Assembly (NCBI GenBank): GCA_004431415.1
Contig: QPMI01000175.1
Location: 62,001 to 126,000, forward strand
Source: Cyanophora paradoxa CCMP329
Taxonomy: Eukaryota; Plantae; Glaucophyta
DNA length: 64,000 nucleotides
Reading direction: 5' to 3'
Position 1 is the first letter of the stretch, and the number at the start of each line of letters is the position of its first letter. Positions 13,926-37,400 of this stretch are shown here, one piece after another. Below the pieces are notes generated by a model. It searched no databases and was not told where the DNA came from. It saw only the letters and a program-made list of their open reading frames with translations. The position numbers and the translations under genes are program-made.

Positions 13926-15078
13926 GTACGGCGAAGCCTCGCGGACGCCCTCGCGGCTGTCACAGTAGGCCTATAGGGCACTGGCCAGCGGCCTGGCCGA
14001 TCGCGAACAGCTTTCTGGTTGGAAGCTGGCCGGCTGACGGCCAGTCCAGCTACCGCTGGCCGGCTAGAGGAATATAACTAGAGGAATATTAATGTACTGA
14101 GGAAATAAAGGGAGGCCGGAGCAGGTTGAGATTAGAGGAGATGAATTATATATAATATTGTTGAGAGGGAGGCCCGGGAGGGGCAAGGTTCTCGCGGCCA
14201 GGCGCATGCACAGAGCTTGCGAATCGCTTAAACAGAATCTTGAATGCATATAGCTATAGCATCGATGTGCGGGGCTGCGGAGCTCGAGGCGAGGGCGCGC
14301 GGAAAGATGTGCAGGTCCATGCAGGATCGAATTTTCGGGGTCGGCTGGGTCCTCGCGGCCCGTCGCATACGCAAAGCGTGCGGAAGACTTTGCCTACATC
14401 TTAAATGCTTATGCTATCGTTCCGCGCATGCGCCGCGGCGTGGGCGCGCGGAAAGATGTCAGGGCGCGTGCAGGATCGAATTTTGGCCGTCGGGTACCTT
14501 CCTGCGCTGTTCCGGCTCCGAAAAGCGGATTTCGGGGGTGCGCAGGCCCTGCTATGTCCATGCGCGCCAGTACGCATCGATTGCGCGCGTCGCGGGACCG
14601 GGCGGGACCGGCTAGCGCTGGATCAAATTTTCGGCCGACTCTTCGCACTGGAGCGTCGACGGCGCTTGAAATCGAGCTTGCGGCGATGCGCTCGCCCTCG
14701 CGCGGCATTCTGTATCGTTCTGGGGCGTCCCTGGCGCGATTTCGTCGCGGGACCGGGCGGGACCGGGTCCCACCTTCTGACTCGGACTGCATTTGTCGGA
14801 GGTTAAGTACCGGAATTGATCCAGAGGGAAATTCGATTTTCGCGCGACGCCCACGGGCGAGCGGTCGTCTTAGGGGAGCCACGACGCTAAAAATGGATCT
14901 AGAGAGGTCTGTGGGGGTTAGGGTAGCTGAGTCATTAGCGGCAATCGCGTCCGTGTCGAGGCAGAATTAATAATTCGTCCTCGAGGGAGTGCGACGCGGA
15001 AATTATTTAGCGGGGGGGATCTTGAGTGGAAAAAAAGGTTAAAAAAGGAATTTATATCGGCGGTTTTTGGGTTTGAGA
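13926..15078 (-). mobile_element. Non-autonomous copy U7 (subtype C), 3' hairpin deleted, no cap
   Basis: Begins at GTACGGCGAAGCCTC, missing the ~28-bp terminal hairpin segment; ends TTTGAGA at 15078. Confidence 0.85.
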
Positions 15079-16715: not shown

Positions 16716-17452
16716 TCGGCTGGGTCCTCGCGGCCCGTCGCATACGCAAAGCGTGCGGAAGACTTTGCCTACATCTTAAATGCTTATGCTATCGTTCCGC
16801 GCATGCGCCGCGGCGTGGGCGCGCGGAAAGATGTCAGGGCGCGTGCAGGATCGAATTTTGGCCGTCGGGTACCTTCCTGCGCTGTTCCGGCTCCGAAAAG
16901 CGGATTTCGGGGGTGCGCAGGCCCTGCTATGTCCATGCGCGCCAGTACGCATCGATTGCGCGCGTCGCGGGACCGGGCGGGACCGGCTAGCGCTGGATCA
17001 AATTTTCGGCCGACTCTTCGCACTGGAGCGTCGACGGCGCTTGAAATCGAGCTTGCGGCGATGCGCTCGCCCTCGCGCGGCATTCTGTATCGTTCTGGGG
17101 CGTCCCTGGCGCGATTTCGTCGCGGGACCGGGCGGACCGGGTCCCACCTTCTGACTCGGACTGCATTTGTCGGAGGTTAAGTACCGGAATTGATCCAGAG
17201 GGAAATTCGATTTTCGCGCGACGCCCACGGGCGAGCGGTCGTCTTAGGGGAGCCACGACGCTAAAAATGGATCTAGAGAGGTCTGTGGGGGTTAGGGTAG
17301 CTGAGTCATTAGCGGCAATCGCGTCCGTGTCGAGGCAGAATTAATAATTCGTCCTCGAGGGAGTGCGACGCGGAAATTATTTAGCAGGGGGGATCTTGAG
17401 TGGAAAAAAAGGTTAAAAAAGGAATTTATATCGGCGGTTTTTGGGTTTGAGA
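16716..17452 (-). mobile_element. Non-autonomous copy U9 (subtype C), 3'-truncated, no cap
   Basis: Starts mid-body (TCGGCTGGGTCCTCGCGGCCCGTCG); ends TTTGAGA at 17452. Confidence 0.8.
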
Positions 17453-17799
17453 CAAGATCCGTGCTCCTGCGGAGCACTAAGTACGGCGAAGCCTCGCGGC
17501 CGCCATCGCGGCTGTCACAGCAGAGGGGCCGGCACTGCTGGGCGCCCGGAGAGTAGGCGGCCAGCTCCAGCCCCGGCCGGCTCATGCAACAGGGAAACGA
17601 CGACTGCAGACGCACATATATAATTTGCTACGCATGCCGGGCTTGCGACATCTGCACTAACTGAGGGCTAGCAAACTTGAACGCGCGAGGGCATGGCTGA
17701 AAGCTATCTACAACATTCGCGCGCATGAGCAGGCAGCGAGCTCGAGGTTGTATACACGAGCAGGTCCCCTTCATGGCGCAACTTGTGTAGGCAGGACGC

Positions 17800-18430
17800 A
17801 ACGCCTGGACCATGGTAGTCAGCCGAGGGTGGCGGGCGGGAGAGGAGGCTGGGAGGCTCACAGGGAAGAGGACAGGGACGGGGGGATCATTGGCACAGGC
17901 AGAAAGCGGTCTGGTCGGAGGCCTGGAGGGGGGTGGACGTGCCAGGGACGCGGGCGGGCCGGGAGGTCGGCTGGGGGCGGGAGGCCTGGAGGGCGGCAGT
18001 GAGGTGAGGCGCGCGGGGGGCAGGGGCGTGCCGGGAGCCTCACGGGCAAAAAGACTCGATGGGGGTGCCAGCCGTTCGACTGACGAGCGCGGCGGCCTGC
18101 GCACAGACGGGCACATCGGCGGCGGGCGGGAGGGCAGGGCGCGCAGTCGAGCTCACGAGGCTGGGAACGACGGGAGGCCTGGAGGGCGCGGGAGAGGACG
18201 CCAGGCGGGCAAGGTGACGACGCTAGTGACGGCGGGAGGCCTGAAGGGCGCGAGTCAGCGGGGGGCGCGCGGGAGGCGGCCGGGGGCGGGGGCGGGCCGG
18301 GAGGCTCACGGGGAAAACGACCGGATGGAGGCGCCGGCCGGTTCGACTGACAGACGCGCCGGCCTGTGTAGAACCGGGTAGACCGGCGGTGGGCGGGCGT
18401 GCTGACGCGGCTAGCGACGACTGGAGGGCT
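17800..18430. repeat. Degenerate GC-rich repeats inside U10, downstream of RepHel
   Basis: Motifs GCCGGCCGGTTCGACTGAC, GGGAGGCCTGGAGGG and GAGGCTCACGGG recur. The same motifs recur at 29560-30930. Confidence 0.6.
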
Positions 18431-18694
18431 GGGCGGAAACGGACAAGGAAAGCGCTGGAGAGTACTGCTGATCCGAGGTATGCAGATGCGTGTAGCTGGC
18501 CGAGCGAGCGAACGTATAGAAACACATGTAATTGGACGATATGCTACCTAGAAACGCGGACATGATCGACGGGCAGTCTGGCTGCACGTGCATGCAGGTC
18601 CCGTAGATGCACCGCGTTATTTCTTTCTGCACACAAAAATACGTCAGTGGGAGTTATGATCATAATGCATCTAGATGTGCATGATTTAACGCAC

Positions 18695-21600
18695 TCAACG
18701 CTTGCGTGCCGCCGCGGAAACGCGCTTCGGCATCGTGTCGACGAAGCGCTTGTTCTTGAACTCGACCTCCGCCTTTTCGAACTCGCGCTGGAACTGTTCG
18801 ACTTGGCCCCAGTCGCCTGGCTCGCATTCCGTGGGGACTGCGTTGACGAGTCGCTGACCGTGCGGCGCGGTGCTGTCCTCGATCCAGCGCAGGTACTGGA
18901 GCTTGTGGCCCCACATTCTTGCGTGCGTTTTCGGATCGTCTTGCCGGAGCCGCGCAAATTCTGCGCTCTCGGCCTTCTGGTCCTTGATGGCGGCTTGCAG
19001 GTCGGGGTTGACGTTCTGAATCACGTGCAGCAGCTCGTACCGTTGCAGGAGCGAGGCGTTCGCGATGAAGAAGTGCGCTCCCTCGCGCGGGCGGCTGAGC
19101 ATGACGTACAGCTGCTGTCGGTGTGTGTAGTCCCTGCTGTTCATGCCCCGCACGTCGGCGATGGCGCGCTTCAGGGTGTGGCCTTGAGCCTTGTAGACCG
19201 TCGTGCCGTAGGCGACGCGGAACGGCGGTCCTATCCTGACGTTGTGCGTGCCTCCTGCCCCACCAGCAATTTCATCCTCGTGGTCTGCGCAACGTGACCG
19301 TAGTCAATCTCGAGAGGGAAGCGCATCTGCATTCACGATCGTGCTGACAAATGCAGCGGCTCACCAGCATTTCTGGGCTCGACGTTGATTTCGACGGCGT
19401 CGACGATTCGACCGTCGGGGAGCTGGCAGCGTTCCGTGATTGCACGCCGGCCGACGCGGTCGTCGTGGAAGTAGATGTAGTACGTCATGGGGGGCATGAG
19501 GTGCGGATGCGGGAGCTGCTCCACCTTCGCCTCTATGCTCTGTTTCTTCTGCCTCGTCACTGCCGCTGCGGCCCGTACAATGTTGTCCTTGCTGACCTTT
19601 GGCTTGCTCTTCTTCCGGTCCGAAGGTCCTGGCTCGGGTTCAGGTTCGGGTTCGGGTTCCGGCTCGGGCTTGGGGGCACGGTCCGCAGTGTCGAGCGCGT
19701 GCTGGACGAGATCCGGTGCAGCGTGTTCGAGCACGAGCGGCGTGTCCGGTGTGAACTCCGTCGCGTGCTGACTGATGTAGTCGGGAGTCTCCGTGTGGTC
19801 TCGCCATTTGTAACCGGCAAGCAGTCCGATGGCGCCGTTGACGAGGCCGTCGTCTGTGTCGCGGTTCTGTCTAAGCATGACCTTGATGCCCGCCGTCACC
19901 ATGACCTTGTGGGGGATGCTTCCTTGTTCGTTCGTGCATGGGATCCTCTCGCCGTACGCGTCCACGCTCTCGCACTTCTTGATGTGCTCGCGCGGATGCG
20001 TGTCCTTGGCGACGATCTTGAGGACAGGGTCGCGGTACTGCGCGTGGTGCCGTCGGATCATCGCGTCGTTGTGCTGCTCTGCGAGCTTGTTCGTGAGGAA
20101 CATGTGGTACGCTTCGTCCCACGTGGGGTCTTGGTTCTTGGTGAGCGTGTTGTGGATGGCATTCTCGTTGTCGTCGCCGAGATCGTTGTTCAGGTCCAGG
20201 CAGTGGCGGAGAAGGTAGTGGTACACGTCGTCGACGTGGTCCGGATCCCCGTCTCGAAACCAGTTGAGGATTTGGCCGAGTTCTGGATCCGCCAGGTGCC
20301 GCATCGAGGACGGCAGGACGTGAGCCGTGAAGTAGCTGAGGAAAGTGTGCAGGTTCGGCGTGTGCCACTTGACGTCATTCTGCATCGTGATGTCCTTCCG
20401 TGCCGGCAACAACGTCTCCCACAGCGACTGGGACTTGACCGGGGGGACCTGGGCCGCGTCCCCGTACGTAATGATTGCCAAGCCTCCGAATGGGTAGCGC
20501 TGCATCACCGGCGTCCTGCCGTCGGGTCCGACCTGGTACTGCGGTAGAGGTGGCGGCGCCAACCCAGTCTCCGGGTCGCCGACGGCTTCACGTCCGCACA
20601 TGGCGTCCTCCAGGGCCGTCTTGAACGAGTAGAAGATGTTCGTCCAGCAGGACATGATCTCGTCGATCTGCAGGACGTACGTTTTCTGCAGCTCGAGTCG
20701 CAGCTTGTCGATTGTGAAGCTGCTGTGCTTGATCTTGTCGCGCTTGCCGGAGAGAAACGATTGGAGGTGGAAGCGGGTGTGCATCGTGCCGCCACCCGCG
20801 TTGAAGCCCGCGGAGCCGAACGGTGCTGCTACGGTGCAACGGCCGTGAGGGAGGGCCTCCATTCCCGCATCACCAACGTTGTACTGGTTTGCAGCGTGTT
20901 CGATGCAGCGGAGTAGGACGGTCTTTCCGCACCCCGCTCCTCCTGTGACGAAGAAGCGCGGCCCCGCAGGCATGTACCAGTACTTGAGAATCTCCGGCAC
21001 GTCTTGACCGCCCTCCGCATCGCGCCTGTATTGCATAGCCCTTGCCTTCAGCGCTTCCGCTTTGCGTCTGAGCTCGAAGTATTTCACCATCTTGTCGTAG
21101 ATTTCGCGTTGCTCCGGCTTCAGGTCGTCGGGCGACAGGAGTGGAGCTCGGGATGACGGTGGAGCCGCCTGAACGGACGGTCCGCCGGTGCCCGCTTCTG
21201 CGGAGGGTGGAATGACACCATGCGCTCGTAGGACTGCCTGTTCCGTTTCAACGGATGCAGGCTGAAACGACGGCGCTGGCAGTCCCGCTCCCAAGGCGCT
21301 CGCTGTGTTTCTGATGGTGCCGGGCTCCGCGTGTTCCGTCACGATTGCGCCCGTCGCCGTCATGTTCGGAATGTCGGTGATCCGGCCGATGATCTCTTCC
21401 ATGCGCACACGGATGTTGTCACTTGCGGCTGACGCGTGGCGCGTGATTGTTGCCTTCCGTGCTTTTGTCATTGCGGCCGCAAGGATCGCGTCGGTGACCT
21501 CCGCACGAGCCGGCATGTCGAGCAGGTCCGTCCACTCGTTCCGGAAGGGGTGGTAGAAGAGTAGCGGCGCGTACTTGGCGACTTGGCCGGAGTGGACGTT

Positions 21601-24600
21601 GAACGGCATCACAACTGGCATGGGTTGCCGTCGCATCCGCAGCTGTTTCTTGCCGCTGACGGTGTTGAAGCACGGTGTGCACCTCTCCTCGTCCGGGATC
21701 ACGAGCGGCGGCGTCTTCTGTAGCTGTCGCCGCTCTTCGTCCGACAGAGCGTCTTCACGCAGCCATCGCTGCCAGAGCGGGTCCAATACCCACGTCTTGG
21801 CCTGCCGTGCCTTCTCCTCGCGGTGCTCGCGTTCGATCTGGCGCTGAGGGTACTCCGGGGCGTCTGAGTCAGGATGGTCGTCGTCGTCATCCTCGTCATC
21901 CTCCGGCTCGTCGCCACCGTGTTGCGAGTCGGTGTGATGCGGCTCGGTTCGTCCTGTCTCCAACGTGGCTGCTGCCAAGGGAGACATGTCGATCTTGTCG
22001 CCTGGAATCCCGTCTTTCTTGGCGACGACGGCAAACCATTGCAGAAACTTGTACAGCGGCATCACGTTCCAGAACTGGTCGTCAGGCCTCTCCATGTACC
22101 AGTCGATGTCGTTGTTCACGAATATTTTCGTCTCGCCAGGATTGCGGTTGCGGATCGGTCGCATGAAGCCGCGCTGGTACGAACGTCTTGTCCGCTTGTC
22201 TGGAGGGATGCACGGAACGGTGCGGGCGTGAAACGACGAGTGCCAGATGGGGTAGTTGAGCATATGGAAAGCTGCCTCCGGCCGGCCGAGTTCGCGGTGG
22301 GAGAGCGACTTCCGAATCGCTTTCGCCATCGCGCTCCGTAGGCTGCCTCCCTTCTCGCCCGCCTTTGCGAGCGCAGCGTATATGCTCTCCAATGCCTGTG
22401 GTTCGACCTGCAGGCGTGAAATGAGCTTCAGTATGCTCTACATCCGGGCAGGGAAGCGTCGGTACGGCCGTACCTTGAGTGCGTACTTGAACATGTACGC
22501 TCCCATCGCTTCGAAGTCCGCGACGAGATCGAAGAAGAGGTTGGAGTGCGCAATGCGGGACAGCCACTCGTTGAACAGCGCCACAAACAAGTCTTCTACT
22601 GTGCGTCGCATCGGCACCAGTAGCCTGTCGCCGCGTTGCGCGTTCTTGAGCTCTGGCGTCGACCTGTGCGTTTGTATTCGTCAGGAATTGTTGCGGGGGC
22701 ACGTCATCGCAGAACTTGAGCACGCACATGAGTCTCGCGTATCGGGATGCGCGGCCTGGCAGTCCGAAGCGGCACCACTTCCTCGCCCTCCACCAGGCGT
22801 TGTTCAGCTTCTTGACGAGGTCGGCAAGTTCCTGGGCGTCCTTGTCGGAAGCGCCGTGGATGGGCTGGCATCCTTCGAGCAACGGGTTCGTGTACTCCTG
22901 AGTCGGCTTGAACTGCGCTGCAGCGGCGAAGAGCTCTTCGTGACGCTTGCGCGTGGAAGATGAATAGTGCTGTGCCTGCTTGGCCTTCGTCATGCGGCAC
23001 GTGCCGCTGTGTCGGTGAATGTTGAACGTGAGGATGACCTTCCGGAGAAACGCGGTCGCCCAATCATGACGAAGGGCATCGGGCACGTGAAGGTTGTCCT
23101 CGACGGCTGGGTCGTCGGGCTTCGGAGGTCGAGGGATCTCCGCCTTGACGATGCTGTCAAAGAATTCGAGGTACTCTTTCATGTGCTGCTTCTCGCACGT
23201 GTCGTACATAGGCATGCCTTCGCACCAGCCGATGAGGTGCCCATGCAACGTCCGCCGCTGCTGCTCGCCGTGACGGATGAAATGACCTGTCATCTTGTAA
23301 CCGCCGAACATCGCCCTCGCGCCTTCGGAGTACATCAGCTTGATCAACGCGTTCCAGCGCCGCTGATAGTGACGGACAACGATTCCGGACTCCGAGTTCA
23401 GGATCGCGTCCTTCTCGTTTGCGCTTAGCGCATCGATTGCGGCCTGGTTGTGGAACCTCTCGCGGTCGATGGCTCTGTACAGACTCGCGTCACCGTGATC
23501 GTTGAAGCTCATAGTGTACCATATCTGCGGCGGGCCGTACGTCTGTGCGGCAGCAATGAGCTGGCCGTGACCGGTCTCGAGATGCTGGTGCGATCCCGGC
23601 ACCTGGAGATGGGCGCGTTACGAAATAATGTGCAAATTGTTGTCAAGGGTGTGCTGCGGCTTACCGCATTCAGCGTCGCGCGGACGAGGTGGCGCTTAAC
23701 AAAGTCTACGGTAACGCTGGGGTCATCGACGGCGGTGGTGAGGTGGTCCATGACGTGCGCGGCCGTCACCGGGTGACCGGCCGCCTCCAACTTGTCGAGC
23801 TCGAGACTCTGAATTGCACAGTTGCTCTTCTGGTAAGCCTTGAGGTTGAGATAATCCGTCGCCTGGACGAAGAAGAATCCGATGTCGGCGACAAGGGCGC
23901 GTGCCTTGTCGGACAGCAGGAACCACTTGTTGTACTTGCTGATCGACAGCGGTACTTTGCGTTGATCGAGAGGGTCTGCAGGGTCGCCTATCCGTCCGTG
24001 CCGGCCTGCGTTCAGAAAGGGTCAATGTCCGTCTGCACGAAATCACAAATCGACGACGGTGCCGGTGCACGGTGCTCACCGTCTGGAAACGCAAATGGAA
24101 ATGGGGCCGTGCAGTACTCTGCACCCTTGCTGAAATTTAAGTGGACGCGATCGAGGATCGGCAACGTGCGAGTACGCTCGGCAACATCTTCGCCGAACGC
24201 TGTGGCAACGTCGACGAGCCTGTGGTGATACTCGGACTGCACGACTGCGGGCGTTGCCGGCTGTTGAGGCATGTCGAATCCGGTGGGGTCGCTGTACACT
24301 GCGGCCTCTGTATCGACGTCGTGCGCCGTAGCACGTGCAAGCTGCACGAACTCGTCGACGTCCTTGTTGTTGATCTGCGCGAGCTTGTCGAGGTCCACGA
24401 GATCGGGAGGGGCGCGTCTGGGCGCGTCCTCGGCTTCGTCCTCGGATCCGGTTTCGCGTGTCGACCTTGCTGTTGACGCGTCACGTGTCGGCCCGACCTC
24501 CGGCTCTGCTGTTGGCAGAGGAGGACGTGCTGTCATTGCGAGCTTCAACGACGACTCCATGAACTGCTTCAACACGGGATCTCCTACGTCGGTCAACAGC

Positions 24601-27270
24601 CGACGGGCTCCGGAGCTGGCGATTTCGTATCCAACGTCGTCGTGGACTTCGGGTTCTTCCGAAGCTTCCGCCTCCTCGTCGCTGCAGCTGGTTGCTGACT
24701 CGGTTCCCGTCGCTGCGTGCGGAACTGCTGTCAGGTCCACCGACTCGCCGGTTCCGGGAACGTGAGGCTGGCGTCCACGTTTGCGGGCGACTCGCGGCGG
24801 TGCGGGCGTGCGGTCGCGCTGCTCTTCGTCAGACAGCTCCCCTTTCCAGTTCGCTGCGTCGGCAGTGGCCTTCTCCCAGTAGGCGTCGTCGAGCTTGTCG
24901 AATCCGCATTTCTGGTACCACTTGTTCCCGGCCGCGACGAGCAGCTTCATGACGCTTCTCACCTTCGAAGTGCTGAACTGCCAGAAGTTGGTGAACTTGC
25001 GGTCGTGTCCGGGCACCGTTGGCTTCTCCATGTTCACGTACATCATCGCGTCTCCCGGGGCGAGAGGCTTCATCGATTCGACGAGCTCGGCGGGCTGCGA
25101 GTAAACCATGGTGACCTTCGGGTGCGCGGCCTGCTGCCGACCGATGCGCGTCGTTGCGATGTTGACGAACGACACGGCCGGACTGCATACGACAGCCTCT
25201 GGAAACGTGAGGCCTGCTGCCTCCCTGGCGAGGTCTTCCGACGGCGGTGTCGGGTGGATGCCGTTCTGTGCGGGGATGGTCAATGACCATACTGGAGAGC
25301 GGTAGAGACACACTCGGACCTCTTTCGAAAGCCCGCAGATATCGACACCTTGCTCTGCGCGGTGTCTGTGGCACATTGCGCAGAGCAACGGTTTCCGCGG
25401 TTTCGACGTTCCGGTTTCCAGCTTGTGCATGTAATCCTCTGTCTCCTGAATGCGCCGTATCGCGGCGTCGTCGATCCCGTGGGGCTTCAATATGTTGAGG
25501 TGCGCCTCGGGGTAGAGATCGTCGATGTAGTCCCGGACGCCGCAGCAATCGCATGGCACCATCGGCTGGTACAGAGCTGCAGAGAGCATTAATGGCGAAA
25601 TGGACATAATCGAATTGAAATTAACGTACTGTACAGCATGTCGATGATAGCGTCCTTCAGCGCGTCAAGAAATTGAGGAAATTTGGAACGCTTCTTTGCC
25701 ACCGCTTCGACTATGTCTCGGAGGAGTTCGTTCGGGTGCTCGTAGTCGCTGATCCACGTCTTCACGCATTTGTGCTTGAACGCTAGTGTACGGTCCTTTT
25801 TGGCGAAACGGATGGCGGCTCGCCTGTCCCGGGCAGCGTCACTGTGTACTGGCTTGTCAATTTTTTCGCGCTGGGATTGACGTGCTCGACGGTTGTACTC
25901 TTGTGAACGTTGGTCATCTGTACGCTGTGCACGCGTGTGTGCGAATGCGTCTGCATGCCCTGACTCGTCAAGTGCATGCCGAGACGCGTACGTCCTTGCA
26001 GGGAAATGTTCCCGTCGTACAGCGGTGTGCTCGTAACAATTACACGGGTCAGTGTCTGCTATTGGCCGCAGGTCCGTTCCTCCATGCAGAAACGCGGGGT
26101 GTGGAGGGATAAAAACTGGAATGGTCCCGAGCCATTTGTGATCGGCCGGAAGAGGACGTGCAGGGCGTCCGGGAGGGACAGCTTGAATTGTAGCTGGAGA
26201 GAAACGAGCAGCATCTGTGAATTTCTCGTGCAGAGGAAGCGCTTCACGCCCGGAAGCATGTATTATGCACATCGACAAATCGTGAAGTGTAGCACGCACG
26301 GTTCGATCTCGAATCTGAAATTGTGAACCGACATGTGGCCAGTTCCGTTGGATGATAACTGCTGCAGCGGGGACTTGCACGGCAGGCTGGCCAGATGGAT
26401 ATTCTTTGCGCGGCGGTAGCAAGTCGGACGGGAGATCCCATGGAATCGACGTGTGCAATGCTGATGTTGCTGTGAGCGTTGGCTTACACATGTGCACGTG
26501 TACGTCGACGACTGTGAACGTCTTTAACGCTGTCCGTCGAACGTGCCAGACTGCCGCAAAAGGCGCTCCATGGACGACAGCAAGAGCCATGACAGTTGTA
26601 CCTCCTGCTAGTCCGGGTAGTGTTGCACGGTGTGAGTACTTCAGTTGAGACGGTATATCGAGAAGGCTGAGAGTCTCAGTTATTGTCTGAGCCGATATCG
26701 CAGATGGAAGTGCGTGACGGAGTTTCTGGACGGGAATCGGCGTCAACGTGCCTGATTTTCGGTCAGTACTGCAATACGACGTGTAACGAGGCATGAGAGA
26801 AATGACCTGGTTGCGATGACGACGATTCAATTGCATGGTGAAAACACAGCATGTCGGACGCAATGTAATATCCGTTTTTTAACGGAGCTAGGACGAGCGA
26901 TTGCGTAAACAGTCGTGCTGTTGCAGCCGTTTGTCCGAACCAGCCCGTGACTGTTACGTGCATACTGTGTGCGTGTCCCTCATGGGCTGTAACCACTGCA
27001 ACACGTGCCCATGCACGATCGAACCGTAATCGAGCGATGCGTTTCTCGATTGCCTGTAGGCCATTACGGTCGGCATGCCGAACACATGAATTATATCAAG
27101 AAAGGATGACCTGGATTCCAACAGCGTAGGAGCTCTTGTGCGATCTCTCATCATTGATCCACATGTGCACACTGCTGTCTCGATAACATCTGTATAATTG
27201 ATGCGGTTGAGAGAGCAGGAGTTGATAGTACTGCTTCACGCATGCTGATGCTGTGGTATCAATTGCTTTG
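18695..27270 (-). CDS. Helitron RepHel (HUH-Y2 replication initiator + PIF1-family helicase) with an N-terminal NTF2-like domain; multi-exon, >2600 aa, 5' end unresolved
   Basis: Rep motifs: PPQIWYTMSFND, EQQRRTLHGHLIGW (HUH), HRHSGTC..CRFGLP, YMFKYALK (Y2). PIF1 motifs: VTGGAGCGKT, IDEI, PFGGLAIITYGDAAQVPPV, LVNGAIG, AYGTTVYKAQG, QLYVMLSR. Frame-restoring GT-AG introns at 27054-27110, 26752-26806, 25577-25629, 24006-24079, 23603-23664, 22664-22727, 22408-22473 and 19285-19364. No AP-endonuclease domain seen. Confidence 0.92.
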
Positions 27271-29559
27271 TGTGTCGCGAGTGGAGATCTCGAGAAATGC
27301 GAGATGGGGCTTGTTTCCGCATGCTCGCAATTTGTTGGAATTTCCAGTGCCATTTCAACATTGAGATCATTTCCGCAGAGATCGGCTGCAGTCGAATTCC
27401 ATTTCCATTCGCGGCACACAGCATTGCCGACGATCCCTGGCGACGTATCATCATGCTTCTGTGTTGAATGTGAGAATGCATTAATGTCTAGGCGTATACG
27501 AGGTCCGGCGCACCGGCTCGCGCGGTGCTCGCGTTTGTGCCGCTTGACTGAAAGGTCCAACTACCATGCTCTCGGAATCACTTGCATGTTCGCGGTTGAC
27601 TGCGAAGTTTTAGAATCTTCTTGGAAAGTGTTTTACGGGTTGTGCACATTGTTTCTTTTGCCTGCTGCGTTGCATAGTTGCAGCATGTGAGGTCGTATCT
27701 TGACGACGCAGTGAGATTGGATTTGACGTTGTAGCTCGTTGACGTTCTAAAACTATGCGAGAATGTCATTTGATGACACACAATAACATTATAATTATGA
27801 CTCGGAGCACCTGACAGGATTTCAGTTGGTTCAACGGGGTTTGAATCAGTTGTAGGTATGACACTTTCTGTATGAGTGCGTTGACGTGGTGGTGACAGTG
27901 TTCGCGGACGACGTCTGCGATTTCCAGATGGCGTTTCTTCAAGAGATTCTGAATCTGATGAAGATTCTCCTGTAGAACTCTTCGAAGCATGTTCATGTGC
28001 CAATTCTTCTCGCATGGATTGAGGTGCGTGGCGGACAGTGTTACGTCGTTGTGCTGGTGGGTTCGAATCAGGGTTTGTTTCAAGACGTAAATTTATGTTG
28101 AAGTAGGCGCACTTGTATTTGTGGGATTAAGGACCATGTACACCATCAGCGATACAAATAGTATCGCGACGGCTGCTGGCAACGACCAGTGCAGCGATGC
28201 ACGCTGGATATGCTCCACGTAAGGCGCATCGGTCGGTAGAGGCATTGCGAGAGTCCCATGATTGCCTGACAAAGTGAGTGTGATCCAGATGCCAGTAACC
28301 GATGGGCTGAATAAGAAGGCTGTTATGTACGCCACTGCGGTGCGCCACGATGGGGCGATTTTCAGAATTTTGTGAATTCACATCATGTGAAAAACGAAAT
28401 CGTCACCCGTCGATATTTGAGCCCGAACACGTTGGACCCACGTATAGTAATATTCACGCCTCCGCGCGTTGTTAATTAATCTTCGCAGAGCTGGAAAAAT
28501 GCGCATATTAATATTGGGTGTGTGATCGACGTGCCGGTTGTGTATACGCACCGGAGTAACCCCTTCTGTTTTTCGTGCGTGTCACAGCATACATATCCAA
28601 TATCAGTGTCAATGCCAGTCCTAGATCTGTGTCGTTGGCAACGGAGAGCGTTCCTTTGTCGGACAAAGCAAAAGGAGAATTGCACTTGATACCCAATTTT
28701 GCGTTTTGCATGTATAGCATCACAGTAATTGCTGAAGCGATTGTCAATGCATTATATGGGCGCCACAGTGATAAAAGAAGATTTTCTTACTCGATATGAA
28801 CATGATCACGCTTGTCGACAACGACGCATTCAGAGTAGTTAGGCAGTTCAGAAATACTGTGAGTGACGACGTGCACAACGGAATCACAGGTAATTCGGCA
28901 TTGTCAGGAAGAGTCACATCACAGTCATGACGACAATCGTTATTGTCAAGGGGACATTCACGACATTTGCGTTTTTGTCCTGTAAACCAACAGAACATTC
29001 CTGCTCGAAATATGTTAGTATGTACGTTGCGTCGTTTACCATATGCAATGGGATTTACCAAGCAGTGCCAGTAATGCGGTAATAAAATCGGCAATGCACA
29101 GAATGTGTACAGTCACAGTTGAGAGTAGTTCCGTCTCTCTCATTTCGGTTCTGGATCTTTCGAAGTCGGCACTGATGGTTCCGTGAGAGCGTGCCGGCAC
29201 GACTGTCGACCCCCGCGCCTGGAGGGAGAGCAAGTTGGCAGATCTAGACATGGCTATATCTAAGACGGTATCTGCTCGTCGATCTCAGCAATGTGGGAAG
29301 CGATTTCAAATCTTGCTTACGTCCATGGTCGATGACAATTGTGGAACACAACGACAGTGCTCGGAACTGTTGTGCAACCATTAAGATGATGCATTTAAGT
29401 ATGAACCGTTGACGTGTGCGTTTACGTCGGGATTTGAAGTGCTGCACTGCTGCGTAGACTCCTGGTTTGTTAAGAATTCGCATTTTTTAAAGAGGCGCTC
29501 TGCGCATGCACAGTGACTATTAGCCTGCGGACTCCGCGCGTGTACGGAAACGGACAATC

Positions 29560-30930
29560 TCAGGAGTCGAGAGTAACGGAAACTCACCGACGGGGCGGGA
29601 CGACGACTCGATGCAGGCGCCGGCCGGTTCGACTGACGGGCGCGCCGGTCTGCGCAACGACGGCGAGATCAGCGGGGGGCGGGAGGGGTGGGCGGGCGGA
29701 CCAGCTGACGAGACTACGGACAACAGAAGGCCTGGAGGGCGCCAGTCAGTTGGGGGCCTCTCGCGCGGGAAAATGGGGCCTAACGTCCGGCCCGTCTGAA
29801 GCCTAGATGGGGCGATTTCCGACGTCGGCCGATGCCCCCCACATATTCAGCCCACCCCCCTTCCCAACATTCATAGTTACCGTGTCCGTCTTGCCTGAGA
29901 TGCTCCCGGAAGCCACAACGTTGCCGGTCACGTTGAGATCACCGCCGACGCTCGTGTTGCCGGCTGCCGTCACTGTGAGGGCCGCCGGGGTCGGCGACAG
30001 GATGGCCGACTTGGGCGCGGCCCCACGTGCCCGATGGGAACCGTTGCGGGGGTCCGGACCGTGCAGCGAGAGAACACGTCCAGCGAGCCTGTTGTGTTCG
30101 AGTGCGCCTCGCCCACCATCGTATCCGTAGCGGGGGGGCAGGGCGCGCGGGCGAGCTCACGAGGGTAGGAACGACGGGAGGCCTGGAGGGTGCAAGTGAG
30201 CCGAGGGCACGGGGGCCGGGGGTAAGCAGGGATCGGATGCTCACGGGGAAAACGAATCGATGGAGGTGCCGGCCGCTTCGACTGACGAGCACGACGACCT
30301 GCACGCAGATGGGGAGATCAGCGGGGGGCGGGAGGGGAGGGCGCGCGGGCGAGCTGACGAGACTACGGACGACGGCAGGCCTGCCAGGCTGGAGGGTGCC
30401 AGTCAGCCGAGGTCGCGGGGGCCGGAAGCGGGCCGGGAGGCTCACGAGCACGACGACCCGAAGGAGGCGCCAACCGGTTCGAGCTGACGAGGCTAGGGAC
30501 GACGAGACGGCCTGCACAGAGAGCACGACGACTTGATGTAAGTGCCGGCCGCTTCGACTGACGAGCGCAGCTCAGGGGCCGGGAGGGGAGGGCGCGCAGG
30601 CGAGCTAGGGTGCCGGGCATGAAGGAGGATTGCGCGGCTCACGGGGACGACGACTCGATGCAGGTGCCGGCCCGTTGGACTGACGAGCGTGCCGGCCTGC
30701 GGAGAGATTGGGAGGCCTGCGCAGAGATTGGAAGATCAGTTCGGACTGGGAGGCCAGCGCGCGGTGCGGAGCTGACGGCAGCTGGCTGCTGTGTCGGCGA
30801 GCAAACGATGATAGAAAGCACGAATGATCTGGACGCGCTCGTCAGCCCAGAGCGCCGGCCGGAAAGCTCACGGGGAGGTGTACTTGATGCAGGTGCTAGC
30901 CGTTTCGACTGCAAAGCACGGGTGCCTGCG
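29560..30930. repeat. Degenerate GC-rich repeats inside U10, upstream of RepHel (duplicated at ~34660-36030)
   Basis: GCCGGCCG(G/C)TTCGACTGACG near 29619, 30268 and 30545, with a variant near 30666. Confidence 0.6.
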
Positions 30931-31194
30931 CAGAGACATGCGTTAACTTTCGTATCTTCCGCGTGTTGTACTAGCATATACTTCCTAGCTATAGCTACTT
31001 AACAGCCATTAGTCTCGCTTGTGCAAAGTATACGTAAATGACACGCGCACGCATACGTATACGTACGTATATGCTGACACGCGCTGACATGTTGACACAG
31101 ATGTGCTTCCTTAGAGGCGGTACTTGCAATTGTTTACAGAATGATGTGCGTGCGTTAACGTCGACATGCCATGCTGCATACTTAGTTGGCACGG

Positions 31195-31406
31195 GCCGTA
31201 CGTACATACATGCTGTCAGACACGCGTGAAGTACTATTAGGCTAGGCTGGCTTGCCAACCCGCATGGCCGGTACGTACATGCATACTGTCAGACGCGCGT
31301 GAACTACTATTAGGCTAGGCTGGCTTGCCAGTCCCCACGGCCCGTACGTACATGCATGCTGTCAGACGCGCGTGAAGTACTACTAGTAGGCTAGGCCGGC
31401 TTGCCG
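31195..31406. repeat. Three 73-bp tandem repeats (again at ~36296-36507)
   Basis: GTACGTACAT..TGTCAGAC(A/G)CGCGTGAA..TAGGCTAGGC(T/C)GGCTTGCC at 31198, 31271 and 31344. Confidence 0.85.
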
Positions 31407-34400
31407 GCCGCGGTCCGGGCGCCAGGACCGGGCCATGACCGGTACTATGTTCAACGGTTGTACGGTAGCCGGTGCCTACAGGGCCTACCGTAGTACAGGG
31501 CTACTACAGGCTGGCCTACATGTACAGGGTCACGGGTGCAGCTGCGGTATAGCTACCAGACTAGTACCAGTCTAGCAATTGAAGACCGCCAGGCTAGCGC
31601 TAGCCTAGTAGCGCTTTCGACGGTCAAGGTACAAGTAACTTACTAAGTTAGTAGCGCGGTAGTCATAATGATATAATAACTATTTTGCATTGTACAGTAG
31701 CTAGACCGAGTGTGCGAAACTGCAAGACTCGGAGCGACAAACTTTGACGACTACCTGACAGTACCTGTCATAAATACATGCTCGGTCGAATCGTCAATGG
31801 CGCCGTTTCGATTGCGTGAGATCTTTTTTTTATTCAAGATCTCGATCGCGACGGATCCCGGATTTATTCAAGATCTCGACGGATCCCGGATCTTCTGTCA
31901 ATGAGTTCGCCGGATCTTTGTTTGTATTCAGGATCTCGCAAGATCGGACGTTAATAAAGATCTGTATACGCGCTGTCGCCCAGTGCAGGTACGGCAAAAA
32001 TGGCTGGAAGCTGGCGCCGGCGGCCGCGGCCCGCGCCCAGGCCGGGCTAGCTAGCGCTGCACCCGCACTACCGTAGTAACCGTAGTACCGGTAGTACTGG
32101 CTTACTGGGCTATGGCCGGATTTGGCCGGCTTGGCCATGGGCTGGCCCGTTATACCCAGCTCGAGAGAGAGGTGGCTGGCCATAGAGGGACAGAGAATAC
32201 ATAATTAATTGGGGAAGGTGTTGGACCGGTAACACTTGCTTTTAACTGGTGGAGGAGATTGAGAGAAGATTAGTTTAAAATTAATATATTGTTGGGGGGG
32301 AGGCCCGGGAGGGGGGAGATGCTCGCAGCCAGGCGCATGCGCAGAGCTTGCGAATCGCTTAAACAGAACCTCGAATGCATATAGTATCAATATGCAGGGC
32401 TGCGGAGGCGAGGGCGCGCGGAAAGCTGTGCAGGCCCGTTCAGGATCGAATTTTCGCGTCGGCTGGTAAAATTAATATATTGTTGGGGGGGAGGCCCGGG
32501 AGGGGCGAGATTCTCGCAGCCAGGCGCATGCGCAGAGCTTGCGAATCGCTTAAACAGAACCTCGAATGCATATAGTATCAATATGCAGGGCTGCGGAGGC
32601 GAGGGCGCGCGGAAAGCTGTGCAGGCCCGTTCAGGATCGAATTTTCGCGTCGGCTGGTTCTCGTGCCCTGTCGCGCCCGCAGAGCTCGCGAAAACCTTTA
32701 AAAAGATCTTAAGTGAATACTGTAGCGATGGGCATGGGTGAGGATGCGAGGGCGCGCGGAAAGGTCTTCAGGTCCGTGAAGGATCGAATTTTCGGGTCGG
32801 CTGGATCCTCGCGGCCTGGCGCATTTAGAGACCGTGCGGAAGGCTTCTTCTACATCTCAAATGCTTATGTTATCGTTCCGCGCATGCGCCGCGGCGTGGG
32901 CGGGCGGAAAGATCTCCGGGCCTGTCTAGGATCGAATTTTTGCCGTCGGTTGGGTTCTCGTGCTCTTTCGCGTCTTCGAAGTTTGTGGAAGGCTTTGATA
33001 AAATCTCAAATGAATATACCAGCGATGCGGCCTGCGTGAGGACGCGAGGGCGCGCGGAAAGTTGTTCAGGTTTGAAGAGGATTGAATTTTCGGGGTCGGC
33101 TGGGTCATCGCGACTGGGCGCATGTGCAAACCGTGTGGAGGGCTTCTTCTACATCTGAAATGCTTATGCTATTGTTCCGCGCATGCGCCGCGGCGCGGGC
33201 GCGCGGAAAGATGTCCGGGCCTGTCCAGGATCGAATTTTCGGGGTCGGCTGGGCCCTCGCGGCCCGGCACATCAGTAAAGCGTGCGAAACGCTTGCTCTA
33301 CATCTCAGATGCTTATGCTATTGCTCCGCGCATGCGCCGCGGCGCGGGCGCGCGGAAAGATGTCCGGGCCCGTGCAGGATCGAATTTTTGTCATCGGGTA
33401 CCTTCCTGCGCTGTTGCGGCTCCGAAAAGCGGATTTTGGGGGTGGGCAGGCCGTGCTATGTCTATGCGCGCCAGTACGCATGGATTGCGCGCGTTGCGGG
33501 ACCGGCCGGAACCGGCCGGATCAAATTTTCGGCCGACTCTTCGTACTGGAGCGTCCGACGGTCGACGGCGCCCGAAATCGAGCTTGCGGCGATGCGAAAA
33601 ATGCGCATATTAATATTGGGTGTGTGATCGACGTGCCGGTTGTGTATACGCACCGGAGTAACCCCTTCTGTTTTTCGTGCGTGTCACAGCATACATATCC
33701 AATATCAGTGTCAATGCCAGTCCTAGATCTGTGTCGTTGGCAACGGAGAGCGTTCCTTTGTCGGACAAAGCAAAAGGAGAATTGCACTTGATACCCAATT
33801 TTGCGTTTTGCATGTATAGCATCACAGTAATTGCTGAAGCGATTGTCAATGCATTATATGGGCGCCACAGTGATAAAAGAAGATTTTCTTACTCGATATG
33901 AACATGATCACGCTTGTCGACAACGACGCATTCAGAGTAGTTAGGCAGTTCAGAAATACTGTGAGTGACGACGTGCACAACGGAATCACAGGTAATTCGG
34001 CATTGTCAGGAAGAGTCACATCACAGTCATGACGACAATCGTTATTGTCAAGGGGACATTCACGACATTTGCGTTTTTGTCCTGTAAACCAACAGAACAT
34101 TCCTGCTCGAAATATGTTAGTATGTACGTTGCGTCGTTTACCATATGCAATGGGATTTACCAAGCAGTGCCAGTAATGCGGTAATAAAATCGGCAATGCA
34201 CAGAATGTGTACAGTCACAGTTGAGAGTAGTTCCGTCTCTCTCATTTCGGTTCTGGATCTTTCGAAGTCGGCACTGATGGTTCCGTGAGAGCGTGCCGGC
34301 ACGACTGTCGACCCCCGCGCCTGGAGGGAGAGCAAGTTGGCAGATCTAGACATGGCTATATCTAAGACGGTATCTGCTCGTCGATCTCAGCAATGTGGGA

Positions 34401-37400
34401 AGCGATTTCAAATCTTGCTTACGTCCATGGTCGATGACAATTGTGGAACACAACGACAGTGCTCGGAACTGTTGTGCAACCATTAAGATGATGCATTTAA
34501 GTATGAACCGTTGACGTGTGCGTTTACGTCGGGATTTGAAGTGCTGCACTGCTGCGTAGACTCCTGGTTTGTTAAGAATTCGCATTTTTTAAAGAGGCGC
34601 TCTGCGCATGCACAGTGACTATTAGCCTGCGGACTCCGCGCGTGTACGGAAACGGACAATCTCAGGAGTCGAGAGTAACGGAAACTCACCGACGGGGCGG
34701 GACGACGACTCGATGCAGGCGCCGGCCGGTTCGACTGACGGGCGCGCCGGTCTGCGCAACGACGGCGAGATCAGCGGGGGGCGGGAGGGGTGGGCGGGCG
34801 GACCAGCTGACGAGACTACGGACAACAGAAGGCCTGGAGGGCGCCAGTCAGTTGGGGGCCTCTCGCGCGGGAAAATGGGGCCTAACGTCCGGCCCGTCTG
34901 AAGCCTAGATGGGGCGATTTCCGACGTCGGCCGATGCCCCCCACATATTCAGCCCACCCCCCTTCCCAACATTCATAGTTACCGTGTCCGTCTTGCCTGA
35001 GATGCTCCCGGAAGCCACAACGTTGCCGGTCACGTTGAGATCACCGCCGACGCTCGTGTTGCCGGCTGCCGTCACTGTGAGGGCCGCCGGGGTCGGCGAC
35101 AGGATGGCCGACTTGGGCGCGGCCCCACGTGCCCGATGGGAACCGTTGCGGGGGTCCGGACCGTGCAGCGAGAGAACACGTCCAGCGAGCCTGTTGTGTT
35201 CGAGTGCGCCTCGCCCACCATCGTATCCGTAGCGGGGGGGCAGGGCGCGCGGGCGAGCTCACGAGGGTAGGAACGACGGGAGGCCTGGAGGGTGCAAGTG
35301 AGCCGAGGGCACGGGGGCCGGGGGTAAGCAGGGATCGGATGCTCACGGGGAAAACGACTCGATGGAGGTGCCGGCCGCTTCGACTGACGAGCACGACGAC
35401 CTGCACGCAGATGGGGAGATCAGCGGGGGGCGGGAGGGGAGGGCGCGCGGGCGAGCTGACGAGACTACGGACGACGGCAGGCCTGCCAGGCTGGAGGGTG
35501 CCAGTCAGCCGAGGTCGCGGGGGCCGGAAGCGGGCCGGGAGGCTCACGAGCACGACGACCCGAAGGAGGCGCCAACCGGTTCGAGCTGACGAGGCTAGGG
35601 ACGACGAGACGGCCTGCACAGAGAGCACGACGACTTGATGTAAGTGCCGGCCGCTTCGACTGACGAGCGCAGCTCAGGGGCCGGGAGGGGAGGGCGCGCA
35701 GGCGAGCTAGGGTGCCGGGCATGAAGGAGGATTGCGCGGCTCACGGGACGACGACTCGATGCAGGTGCCGGCCCGTTGGACTGACGAGCGTGCCGGCCTG
35801 CGGAGAGATTGGGAGGCCTGCGCAGAGATTGGAAGATCAGTTCGGACTGGGAGGCCAGCGCGCGGTGCGGAGCTGACGGCAGCTGGCTGCTGTGTCGGCG
35901 AGCAAACGATGATAGAAAGCACGAATGATCTGGACGCGCTCGTCAGCCCAGAGCGCCGGCCGGAAAGCTCACGGGGAGGTGTACTTGATGCAGGTGCTAG
36001 CCGTTTCGACTGCAAAGCACGGGTGCCTGCGCAGAGACATGCGTTAACTTTCGTATCTTCCGCGTGTTGTACTAGCATATACTTCCTAGCTATAGCTACT
36101 TAACAGCCATTAGTCTCGCTTGTGCAAAGTATACGTAAATGACACGCGCACGCATACGTATACGTACGTATATGCTGACACGCGCTGACATGTTGACACA
36201 GATGTGCTTCCTTAGAGGCGGTACTTGCAATTGTTTACAGAATGATGTGCGTGCGTTAACGTCGACATGCCATGCTGCATACTTAGTTGGCACGGGCCGT
36301 ACGTACATACATGCTGTCAGACACGCGTGAAGTACTATTAGGCTAGGCTGGCTTGCCAACCCGCATGGCCGGTACGTACATGCATACTGTCAGACGCGCG
36401 TGAACTACTATTAGGCTAGGCTGGCTTGCCAGTCCCCACGGCCCGTACGTACATGCATGCTGTCAGACGCGCGTGAAGTACTACTAGTAGGCTAGGCCGG
36501 CTTGCCGGCCGCGGTCCGGGCGCCAGGACCGGGCCATGACCGGTACTATGTTCAACGGTTGTACGGTAGCCGGTGCCTACAGGGCCTACCGTAGTACAGG
36601 GCTACTACAGGCTGGCCTACATGTACAGGGTCACGGGTGCAGCTGCGGTATAGCTACCAGACTAGTACCAGTCTAGCAATTGAAGACCGCCAGGCTAGCG
36701 CTAGCCTAGTAGCGCTTTCGACGGTCAAGGTACAAGTAACTTACTAAGTTAGTAGCGCGGTAGTCATAATGATATAATAACTATTTTGCATTGTACAGTA
36801 GCTAGACCGAGTGTGCGAAACTGCAAGACTCGGAGCGACAAACTTTGACGACTACCTGACAGTACCTGTCATAAATACATGCTCGGTCGAATCGTCAATG
36901 GCGCCGTTTCGATTGCGTGAGATCTTTTTTTATTCAAGATCTCGATCGCGACGGATCCCGGATTTATTCAAGATCTCGACGGATCCCGGATCTTCTGTCA
37001 ATGAGTTCGCCGGATCTTTGTTTGTATTCAGGATCTCGCAAGATCGGACGTTAATAAAGATCTGTATACGCGCTGTCGCCCAGTGCAGGTACGGCAAAAA
37101 TGGCTGGAAGCTGGCGCCGGCGGCCGCGGCCCGCGCCCAGGCCGGGCTAGCTAGCGCTGCACCCGCACTACCGTAGTAACCGTAGTACCGGTAGTACTGG
37201 CTTACTGGGCTATGGCCGGATTTGGCCGGCTTGGCCATGGGCTGGCCCGTTATACCCAGCTCGAGAGAGAGGTGGCTGGCCATAGAGGGACAGAGAATAC
37301 ATAATTAATTGGGGAAGGTGTTGACCGGTAACACTTGCTTTTAACTGGTGGAGGAGATTGAGAGAAGATTAGTTTAAAATTAATATATTGTTGGGGGGAG

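What the first reader, a model, noticed from the sequence alone, without database searches (positions are those of the whole stretch)
25577..27270. G3BP-like NTF2 domain spliced in frame onto the Helitron RepHel
Seen: removing the intron at 27054-27110 gives TASACVKQYYQLLLSQPHQLYRCYRDSSVHMW..YAVGIQ|AIEKRIARLRFDRAWARVAVVTAHEGHAHSMHVTVTGWFGQTAATARLFTQSLVLAPLKNGYYIASDML. By eye this aligns over its full length with the NTF2 domain of G3BP/Rasputin/Bre5 (FVxQYY..L..P..L.RFY; RxFxQxFxLAP..Y.V.ND.F). Introns at 26752-26806 and 25577-25629 keep this frame continuous into the RepHel. Established: G3BP NTF2 domains dimerise, bind FGDF-type motifs and nucleate stress granules. Helitron accessory domains usually described are zinc fingers, AP endonuclease, OTU/cysteine protease and RPA. 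Inference: a captured domain used for dimerisation, nuclear transport or as a decoy against stress-granule defence.
Basis: partly seen in the sequence, partly recalled or inferred. Interest (0 to 1): 0.8.

Follow-up and report, generated by a model that had tools for sequence, protein, structure and literature searches.

The report
NTF2 domain fused to Helitron transposase
An expressed rolling-circle transposon (Helitron) gene carries, spliced in frame ahead of its transposase, a divergent copy of the NTF2-like domain found in stress-granule protein G3BP; this accessory domain was not found reported for Helitrons, but whether it travels with the element is still open.

Summary
Pfam NTF2 (PF02136) matches the two predicted exons colinearly (profile 2-36, then 44-115). 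A model of the second exon folds as the NTF2 beta-sheet, and its best solved matches are G3BP1, G3BP2 and Rasputin. Transcript-like contigs from two runs (X18, X19; one study) skip all three predicted introns exactly, plus nine more GT..AG introns. The frame, tracked exon by exon, stays open from about 28.2 kb to 19.3 kb, through Rep and PIF1-like helicase.

- The NTF2 domain is not at the N-terminus. Four more exons lie upstream.
- The gene is a mosaic. Exons 1-6 (NTF2 plus an orphan 373-residue linker) have GC3 0.45 and about 1x DNA depth. Exons 7-12 (RepHel core) have GC3 0.77 and about 3.6x depth. The break lies near 25657, 18 nt before an in-frame ATG.
- Both columns matching G3BP1 groove residues F15 and F33 are Cys.

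No RepHel-sized relative of this NTF2 was found among 1.84 billion representative proteins. The closest protein is a 181-aa Cyanophora paradoxa model, apparently with the same intron position. The scan flagged NTF2 upstream of RepHel on two other pieces of this genome (s1-509682, s1-511479); I could not check them. Function is inferred only.

The parts
28113..28245 (-). 3' part of the most upstream exon seen. It holds the first in-frame ATG after the last stop (ATG at 28245, stop at 28380). The RNA contig runs about 1 kb further upstream, into the duplicated unit that begins at 28494.
27811..28053 (-). Exon 1. It holds the second candidate start, ATG 28015, and encodes a Ser/Arg/Glu-rich low-complexity stretch with a basic RRRRPR cluster.
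   Evidence: RNA joints 28053|28113 and 27752|27811; translation; no Pfam family
27648..27752 (-). Exon 2, low-complexity coding.
27514..27599 (-). Exon 3.
27111..27458 (-). Exon 4. Its last ~50 codons (about 27260-27111) are the N-terminal helical part of the NTF2-like domain.
   Evidence: Pfam NTF2 profile 2-36, 21.8 bits; 38% identity over 50 aa to P0003; profile A2 hits Rasputin and G3BP1/2
27054..27110 (-). Phase-0 intron (57 nt, GT..AG) that splits the NTF2 domain.
   Evidence: skipped in X18 and X19 contigs, not in DNA run X1; ends
26807..27053 (-). Exon 5: the C-terminal beta-sheet part of the NTF2-like domain.
   Evidence: Pfam NTF2 profile 44-115, 30.1 bits; AF2 pLDDT 79.5, one helix plus four strands; Foldseek top hits are G3BP1/2 and Rasputin NTF2L
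26752..26806 (-). Phase-1 intron, 55 nt.
25630..26751 (-). Exon 6: an orphan 373-residue linker with no recognisable family. Its last ~28 nt (25657-25630), with the in-frame ATG at 25639, already belong to the multi-copy RepHel core.
   Evidence: 0 stops against 10-14 in the other frames; Pfam, word search and Atlas all blank; depth break
25577..25629 (-). Intron, 53 nt, donor GTACGT. It contains the ATG (25607) of the mechanical ORF 24012-25607.
24080..25576 (-). Exons 7-8 (intron 25266-25319 between them): a Cys-rich stretch and a weak DUF6570 match, a domain that precedes the Rep domain in this gene.
   Evidence: Pfam DUF6570, 21.3-21.7 bits, below the cut-off of 24.3; joints
22474..24005 (-). 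Exons 9-11 (introns 23603-23664 and 22664-22727): Rep endonuclease, with an HxH motif (LHGHLI) and a two-tyrosine motif (YMFKY).
   Evidence: Pfam Helitron_like_N, 38.4 bits against cut-off 28.9; motifs read; joints
19336..22407 (-). Exon 12 (after intron 22408-22473): PIF1-like SF1 helicase with Walker A (GGAGCGKT).
   Evidence: Pfam PIF1, 29.7 bits against cut-off 25.9; intron from loose ends at 22472
18695..19284 (-). Probable last exon, with a TVYKAQG helicase motif.
   Evidence: candidate splice only, untested

Best explanation
This is an expressed, intron-rich Helitron transposase gene, about 9.5 kb long, with at least 12 RNA-supported GT..AG introns of 48-74 nt and a product of about 2,860 residues.

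Its mRNA places an N-terminal module of about 710 codons in frame ahead of a complete Rep + PIF1-helicase core. The module is, in order, a low-complexity basic/acidic leader, a divergent G3BP-type NTF2-like domain split by a phase-0 intron, and an orphan 373-residue linker.

Module and core have different histories. The core is multi-copy and GC3-rich; the module is about single-copy and GC3-poor. They are joined at the DNA level inside exon 6, about 18 nt upstream of what looks like the core's own start codon. The NTF2 module is therefore an acquired N-terminal extension of the transposase.

Inferred, not shown: the NTF2 cone gives the large transposase a self-association handle or a handle for FG-nucleoporins or host proteins, helping nuclear entry or assembly. 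It is unlikely to be a classical FGDF-peptide binder.
For: NTF2 domain:
- Two colinear Pfam hits.
- Fold of exon 5 and its G3BP-family matches.
- PDB sequence and profile hits.

Fusion and expression:
- X18 and X19 contigs skip 11 introns within 22400-28200, all GT..AG on the gene's strand; DNA run X1 skips none of them.
- A 12th intron follows from loose ends at 22472.
- RNA contigs match this copy with 0 differences, at similar depth (about 14-17) over the NTF2 and RepHel parts.
- The frame is open across all junctions.

RepHel identity: Helitron_like_N and PIF1 score above their cut-offs, and the HxH, YxxxY and Walker A motifs were read directly.

Mosaic structure:
- X1 depth is about 285-445 with 1.6-3.7% variant letters over 22400-25657, against 73-101 with no variants over 25628-28200.
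- GC3 is 0.77 for the core (1898 codons) against 0.45 for the module (713 codons), with similar GC1 and GC2.
- An in-frame ATG sits at 25639.

The module is not host-like: ORFs in the GC-rich flank have GC3 0.84-0.87.

Recurrence (leads only):
- Notes s1-509682 and s1-511479 report NTF2 upstream of, and co-oriented with, RepHel on two other pieces of the genome.
- P0003, the closest protein over both halves, has a 17-residue insert starting V and ending Q exactly at this gene's intron position.
Against: - No single RNA molecule was seen from the NTF2 exons to the helicase. The evidence is overlapping short-read contigs from one study, and a contig across two genes does not prove one transcript.
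- At 90% identity or more, the near-identical extra RepHel copies have no NTF2 module. Most copies may lack it, and the Helitron termini were not located.
- An internal start at 25639 could yield a RepHel without NTF2.
- No paralogue or orthologue of the fusion could be fetched. All three word searches were blank, and the exhaustive search gave five weak hits: four ordinary NTF2-domain proteins or fragments and one low-complexity match.
- The columns matching groove residues F15 and F33 are Cys.
- The functional role rests on knowledge of NTF2-fold proteins only.
Confidence: 0.55

Rival explanations
1. Locus-specific chimera. A Helitron copy landed next to, or inside, an unrelated NTF2-encoding gene or other repeat. 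Read-through transcription happens to keep the frame, so the NTF2 module is flanking DNA, not part of any mobile Helitron.
For: The copy-number and GC3 breaks coincide at about 25657, just upstream of an in-frame ATG that could be the element's own start. No contig 90% or more alike to the NTF2 region exists elsewhere in DNA run X1. Helitrons are known for chimeric transcripts with captured or flanking gene pieces (established knowledge).
Against: The module's GC3 (0.45) is far from that of host-like ORFs in this window (0.84-0.87). There is no 5'-TC terminus at the break (read). The last 28 nt of exon 6 and its donor site are shared with the multi-copy core, so other copies also have an upstream exon there. 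Two other loci of the genome were noted with NTF2 upstream of and co-oriented with RepHel (unchecked).
Confidence: 0.2
2. The fused reading frame is transcribed, but the protein made is mainly the plain RepHel from the internal ATG at 25639. The upstream exons then act as a long leader or yield a separate product, so no NTF2-RepHel polypeptide matters biologically.
For: There is an in-frame ATG 18 nt inside the multi-copy core. GC3 of the upstream exons is low, 0.24-0.50. No proteomic or ribosome data exist.
Against: About 710 codons stay open across six spliced exons, while the other frames of exon 6 carry 10-14 stops. GC1 exceeds GC2, a coding-like pattern. The exon 5 part of the NTF2 domain folds with high confidence, pLDDT 87-94 over the strands. 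All splice phases preserve the frame.
Confidence: 0.12
3. A domesticated, immobile host gene derived from a Helitron transposase that gained an NTF2 domain.
For: The gene has many introns, steady expression, and a unique N-terminal part at single-copy depth that is identical between strains.
Against: The RepHel core is present in several copies 96-98% alike. The catalytic motifs are those of an active transposase. The locus sits in satellite and duplicated DNA rather than among host genes. Its GC3 differs from that of host-like ORFs.
Confidence: 0.08

Closest known systems
NTF2-like domain of G3BP1/G3BP2/Rasputin (and yeast Bre5)
   Same: It is the best sequence match among solved structures (Rasputin 3ujm, then G3BP2 and G3BP1) and the best fold match for exon 5 (top 25 Foldseek hits, TM 0.6-0.66 by query; Bre5 and yeast NTF2 rank just below). 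The shared motifs QYY...L..P..L and R.FTQ...LAP...Y...D are present.
   Different: The domain sits about 200 residues from the start, not at the N-terminus. Pfam finds no RRM, and no RGG region was looked for. It is followed by a 373-residue orphan linker and a transposase. Identity to G3BP family chains is only 25-30%. The columns matching groove residues F15 and F33 are Cys.
Helitron RepHel proteins with accessory domains (zinc fingers, RPA-like, OTU/cysteine protease, AP endonuclease)
   Same: It has a Rep (HUH, two-Tyr) plus PIF1-like helicase core, is multi-copy, and carries extra domains fused to or encoded with the transposase. Other notes on this genome describe OTU/USP-like ends on RepHel (unchecked).
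   Different: The extra domain is an NTF2 fold at the N-terminal side. No paper in the held library couples Helitron with NTF2 or G3BP as a fusion. No RepHel-sized protein carries a similar NTF2 among 1.84 billion representatives.
P0003, a 181-aa Cyanophora paradoxa gene model (EukProt EP00741, tig00000248_g21795.t1)
   Same: It is the closest protein over both halves: 38% over 50 aa and 42% over 72 aa. It is itself a divergent NTF2 (Pfam 41.9 bits). A 17-residue insert lies exactly at this gene's intron site.
   Different: It is annotated as a short stand-alone protein. Its genomic neighbourhood could not be fetched, so any link to a RepHel is unknown. It keeps Phe at the F15 and F33 columns.
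NTF2 proper and the NXF1/p15 (NXT) NTF2-like modules that bind FG nucleoporins
   Same: Same fold. These modules are the basis for the idea that the domain could help passage through the nuclear pore.
   Different: The matches are much weaker: E 0.04-0.3 for NTF2 and NXT against 3e-6 for Rasputin. Ran- and FG-binding residues were not examined.

Membership tests
NTF2 domain (Pfam PF02136) | HMM score at or above the gathering cut-off | tested here: met
Exon 4 scores 21.8 bits and exon 5 scores 30.1 bits, each alone at or above the cut-off of 21.
NTF2 domain (Pfam PF02136) | Full-length, colinear coverage of the domain | tested here: met
   Profile 2-36 lies in exon 4 and 44-115 in exon 5, separated by an RNA-confirmed intron.
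NTF2 domain (Pfam PF02136) | Alpha+beta cone fold | tested here: inconclusive
   Only exon 5 was folded: one helix plus four long strands, pLDDT 79.5, matching the sheet of G3BP and NTF2 structures. The helical half and the whole domain were not folded.
G3BP/Rasputin/Bre5 proteins | NTF2-like domain closer to G3BP than to NTF2, NXT or NXF | tested here: met
   Caveats: the profile and the alignment included a G3BP-like relative (P0002), and G3BP1 is over-represented in the PDB.
G3BP/Rasputin/Bre5 proteins | N-terminal NTF2-like domain followed by an RRM (and an RGG region) | tested here: not met
   Pfam finds no RRM in any exon. The NTF2 starts about 200 residues in and is followed by the orphan linker and RepHel.
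G3BP/Rasputin/Bre5 proteins | Hydrophobic peptide-binding groove (G3BP1 F15, F33, F124) | tested here: not met
   The columns matching F15 and F33 are Cys in the window but Phe in P0002, P0003, Rasputin and G3BP1. The F124-like column is Leu, against Phe in Rasputin, and varies between L and F in relatives. The residue numbers come from the title of PDB entry 7s17 and from spacing.
G3BP/Rasputin/Bre5 proteins | Homodimerisation through the NTF2-like domain | not tested
   No complex prediction was run, because the joined domain could not be submitted.
Helitron (RepHel transposase) | Rep domain with HUH-type motif and two catalytic tyrosines | tested here: met
   Helitron_like_N scores 38.4 bits against a cut-off of 28.9. 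LHGHLI and YMFKY were read.
Helitron (RepHel transposase) | C-terminal PIF1-like SF1 helicase | tested here: met
   PIF1 scores 29.7 bits against a cut-off of 25.9. Walker A (GGAGCGKT) and a TVYKAQG motif were read.
Helitron (RepHel transposase) | Repeated in the genome | tested here: met
   DNA contig depth is about 3-4.5 times that of the adjacent unique part, with 1.6-3.7% variant letters.
Helitron (RepHel transposase) | Element termini (5' TC, 3' hairpin plus CTRR, insertion at AT) | tested here: inconclusive
   By eye, no convincing termini were found at 25657, at 28494 or downstream of the stop. The locus is buried in satellite repeats and a 5.1-kb tandem duplication.

The most novel reading that the evidence does not exclude
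A Helitron lineage has recruited a G3BP-type NTF2-like domain as a heritable N-terminal module of its transposase. The module persists in diverged copies (the two other flagged loci, and a Cyanophora paradoxa relative with the same intron position). It serves nuclear-pore docking, self-association or hijacking of host G3BP partners. This would be a new class of Helitron accessory domain.
Probability: 0.35. Interest if true: 0.7.

Novelty: new variant of a known kind. Interest (0 to 1): 0.55.

Why it matters
Helitrons are known to capture host gene pieces, but few captured domains are shown to be spliced in frame into the transposase itself and expressed. Here the splice junctions are supported by RNA contigs, and the boundary between the acquired module and the transposase core can be placed to within a few bases.

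If the NTF2 module proves to be carried by mobile copies, it would add a new accessory domain to the Helitron repertoire. It would also give a testable handle on how a transposase of about 300 kDa reaches the nucleus or assembles. If it is a one-locus chimera, it is still a clean example of exon recruitment by a transposon, but of ordinary interest.

Tried and rejected
- Genome-contig scan with exon 6: blank, and that collection holds only bacteria and archaea.
- Word searches with exon 6, exon 5 and the helicase part: no hits. The length window means fusions or fragments of other lengths are not excluded.
- Exhaustive search with exon 5: five weak hits, four ordinary NTF2-domain proteins or fragments and one low-complexity artefact (P0005), none RepHel-sized.
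- Context of the Logan/ENA hit P0006: no Helitron beside it.
- Exact look-ups of the exon 6 ORF and of P0003: not on record.
- ESM Atlas with exon 6: nothing usable.
- PDB sequence search with exon 4 alone: only chance-level hits.
- Findings search by sequence: blank.
- Rejected: the NTF2 similarity being chance. There are two independent colinear HMM hits, a fold match and a 38-42% relative.
- Rejected: the junction at 28493/28494 being an element end. It is the breakpoint of a 99.8%-identical 5.1-kb tandem duplication.
- Hairpin-bearing 87-nt repeat ends in the satellite array: considered as Helitron 3' ends, but no CTRR terminus was seen. Left open.
- All searches were made exon by exon by reference. 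Frame continuity was checked by phase bookkeeping only.
- Complex prediction for dimerisation was not sent.

Full report
**What is there**

The minus strand between about 28.3 kb and 18.7 kb holds one long split gene.

Pfam finds these families, in order along the gene:
- NTF2 (PF02136) in two adjacent pieces. Exon 27458-27111 matches profile positions 2-36 (21.8 bits). Exon 27053-26807 matches positions 44-115 (30.1 bits). Each alone reaches the family cut-off of 21.
- A weak DUF6570 match (below its cut-off).
- Helitron_like_N (38.4 bits against 28.9).
- PIF1 (29.7 bits against 25.9).

The Rep motifs (LHGHLI, YMFKY) and the helicase Walker A (GGAGCGKT) can be read directly in the translations.

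**Splicing and expression**

I laid contigs of four public runs on 22400-28200. Runs X18 and X19 are small, transcriptome-like assemblies from one study. Their contigs match the window with no differences.

- They skip 11 short segments that all begin GT and end AG on the gene's strand.
- The DNA run X1 shows none of these joints.
- Loose ends at 22472 point to a twelfth intron, 22408-22473.
- RNA contig depth is similar (about 14-17) over the NTF2 and RepHel parts.
- Overlapping contigs tile the whole stretch, including all of exon 6.

I tracked the reading phase exon by exon, without building or searching a joined sequence. The frame has no stop from 28380 to 19335. One more untested intron, near 19285-19364, would add the last helicase exon, ending at about 18697.

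Four more exons precede the NTF2 exon, and one RNA contig runs about 1 kb beyond 28113. Candidate starts are ATG 28245 and ATG 28015. From 28015 the product would be about 2,860 residues, with the NTF2 domain at roughly residues 200-320.

**Kind of NTF2**

- Among solved structures, exon 5 matches Rasputin best (3ujm, E 1.6e-3), then G3BP2 and G3BP1, and no NTF2 proper.
- A small profile of the N-terminal half hits Rasputin and G3BP1/2 at E 3e-6 to 1e-5. NTF2, Bre5 and NXT reach only 0.04-0.3. That profile includes a G3BP-like relative, so it leans that way.
- An AlphaFold model of exon 5 (pLDDT 79.5; one helix and four long strands) has G3BP1, G3BP2 and Rasputin NTF2-like domains as its top 25 Foldseek hits. 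Bre5 and yeast NTF2 come next (TM 0.6-0.66 by query).

'G3BP-like domain' therefore holds. The protein is not G3BP-like:
- Pfam finds no RRM.
- The domain is internal, not N-terminal.
- The two columns matching G3BP1 groove residues F15 and F33 are Cys here, but Phe in the relatives.

That weakens the FGDF-binding and stress-granule-decoy idea.

**A mosaic gene**

Two independent signals break at the same place.

- Copy number. In DNA run X1, contig depth is about 285-445 over 22400-25657, with 1.6-3.7% variant letters. Over 25628-28200 it is 73-101 with no variants. A unique contig starts at 25628, which for 31-letter words puts the last shared base near 25657.
- Composition. GC at third codon positions is 0.45 in exons 1-6 (713 codons) and 0.77 in exons 7-12 (1898 codons), with similar GC1 and GC2.

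The break lies inside exon 6, 18 nt upstream of an in-frame ATG (25639) and 28 nt upstream of the donor site. The multi-copy RepHel core therefore looks complete in itself. The NTF2-bearing module is an N-terminal extension joined to it at the DNA level.

The module still looks coding. Its frame has 0 stops, against 10-14 in each other frame of exon 6, and GC1 exceeds GC2. It does not resemble the host-like GC-rich ORFs of this window, whose GC3 is 0.84-0.87.

**Relatives**

- The three word searches were blank.
- The exhaustive search of 1.84 billion representatives with exon 5 gave five weak hits: four ordinary NTF2 proteins or fragments and one low-complexity artefact, none RepHel-sized.
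- The closest over both halves is P0003, a divergent 181-aa NTF2 model from Cyanophora paradoxa: 38% over 50 aa and 42% over 72 aa.
- P0003 has a 17-residue insert that starts with V and ends with Q exactly where this gene has its intron. This looks like a retained 51-nt intron, which would imply a shared gene structure. Its genomic context could not be fetched.
- Exon 6 has no recognisable relative anywhere.
- The held literature has no Helitron-NTF2 or Helitron-G3BP fusion.
- The scan's own notes list NTF2-like domains upstream of, and co-oriented with, RepHel on two other pieces of this genome (s1-509682, s1-511479). These are unchecked leads.

**Reading**

- Most likely (0.55): an expressed Helitron transposase with an acquired N-terminal NTF2 module. 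By inference from the fold's known roles, the module would help self-association or docking to the nuclear pore or to host factors.
- Rival (0.2): a one-locus chimera with flanking DNA.
- Rival (0.12): translation mainly from the internal ATG, so that the fusion protein is marginal.
- Rival (0.08): a domesticated gene.

The Helitron termini were not found. The locus is embedded in satellite arrays and in a 5.1-kb tandem duplication that is 99.8% identical.

**Limits**

- No single-molecule transcript, no paralogue sequences and no protein-level data were available.

Noticed in passing
window 28494-38697: A 5,102-bp unit is tandemly duplicated (28494-33595 and 33596-38697) at 99.8% identity. 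The left breakpoint lies inside the 5' part of the RepHel transcript, so the promoter region or first exon may exist twice.
   Followed up: partly
window 5500-17540; also 32276-33520 and 37375-38620: Satellite arrays with 149- and 297-nt periods are arranged in higher-order units of about 1.2-1.6 kb. Each unit ends in an 87-nt element with a 7-bp-stem hairpin (GTGCTCC..GGAGCAC). The same families flank the RepHel gene on both sides. A link to Helitron ends is possible, but no CTRR terminus was seen.
   Followed up: partly
window 17825-18450, 29597-30910, 34699-36010: G-rich repeats of about 70 nt (C-rich on the gene strand), 62-87% alike to one another, sit just downstream of the gene's stop and upstream of its first exons.
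   Followed up: no
window 42000-60000: This stretch is extremely GC-rich (73-82%), with long overlapping ORFs on both strands. Only a sub-threshold WW-domain match (25.0 bits against cut-off 26.9) was found among seven ORFs tested. GC3 of the best ORFs is 0.84-0.87.
   Followed up: partly
P0003 residues 70-86 (public Cyanophora paradoxa gene model): A 17-residue insert begins with V (GTN) and ends with Q (CAA or CAG), exactly at the position of the window's NTF2 intron. It is probably an in-frame retained intron in the public gene model.
   Followed up: partly
window 25607 and 25639: Two ATGs lie near the module/core boundary. ATG 25639 is in frame in exon 6, 18 nt inside the multi-copy core. 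ATG 25607 lies inside the spliced intron and opens the mechanical 531-aa ORF. Either could give an NTF2-less RepHel from unspliced or internally initiated RNA.
   Followed up: no
window 27103-27253 (run X20): One read-length contig from a third run, of another study, crosses the exon 4/intron boundary unspliced at depth about 3. It could be pre-mRNA or DNA carry-over.
   Followed up: no
window 24492-24539 and 24681: The abundant RepHel variant in DNA run X1 lacks 46 nt (24493-24538) and 6 nt (at 24681) relative to this copy. The 46-nt deletion would break the frame of exon 8, so some of the extra copies may be defective.
   Followed up: no
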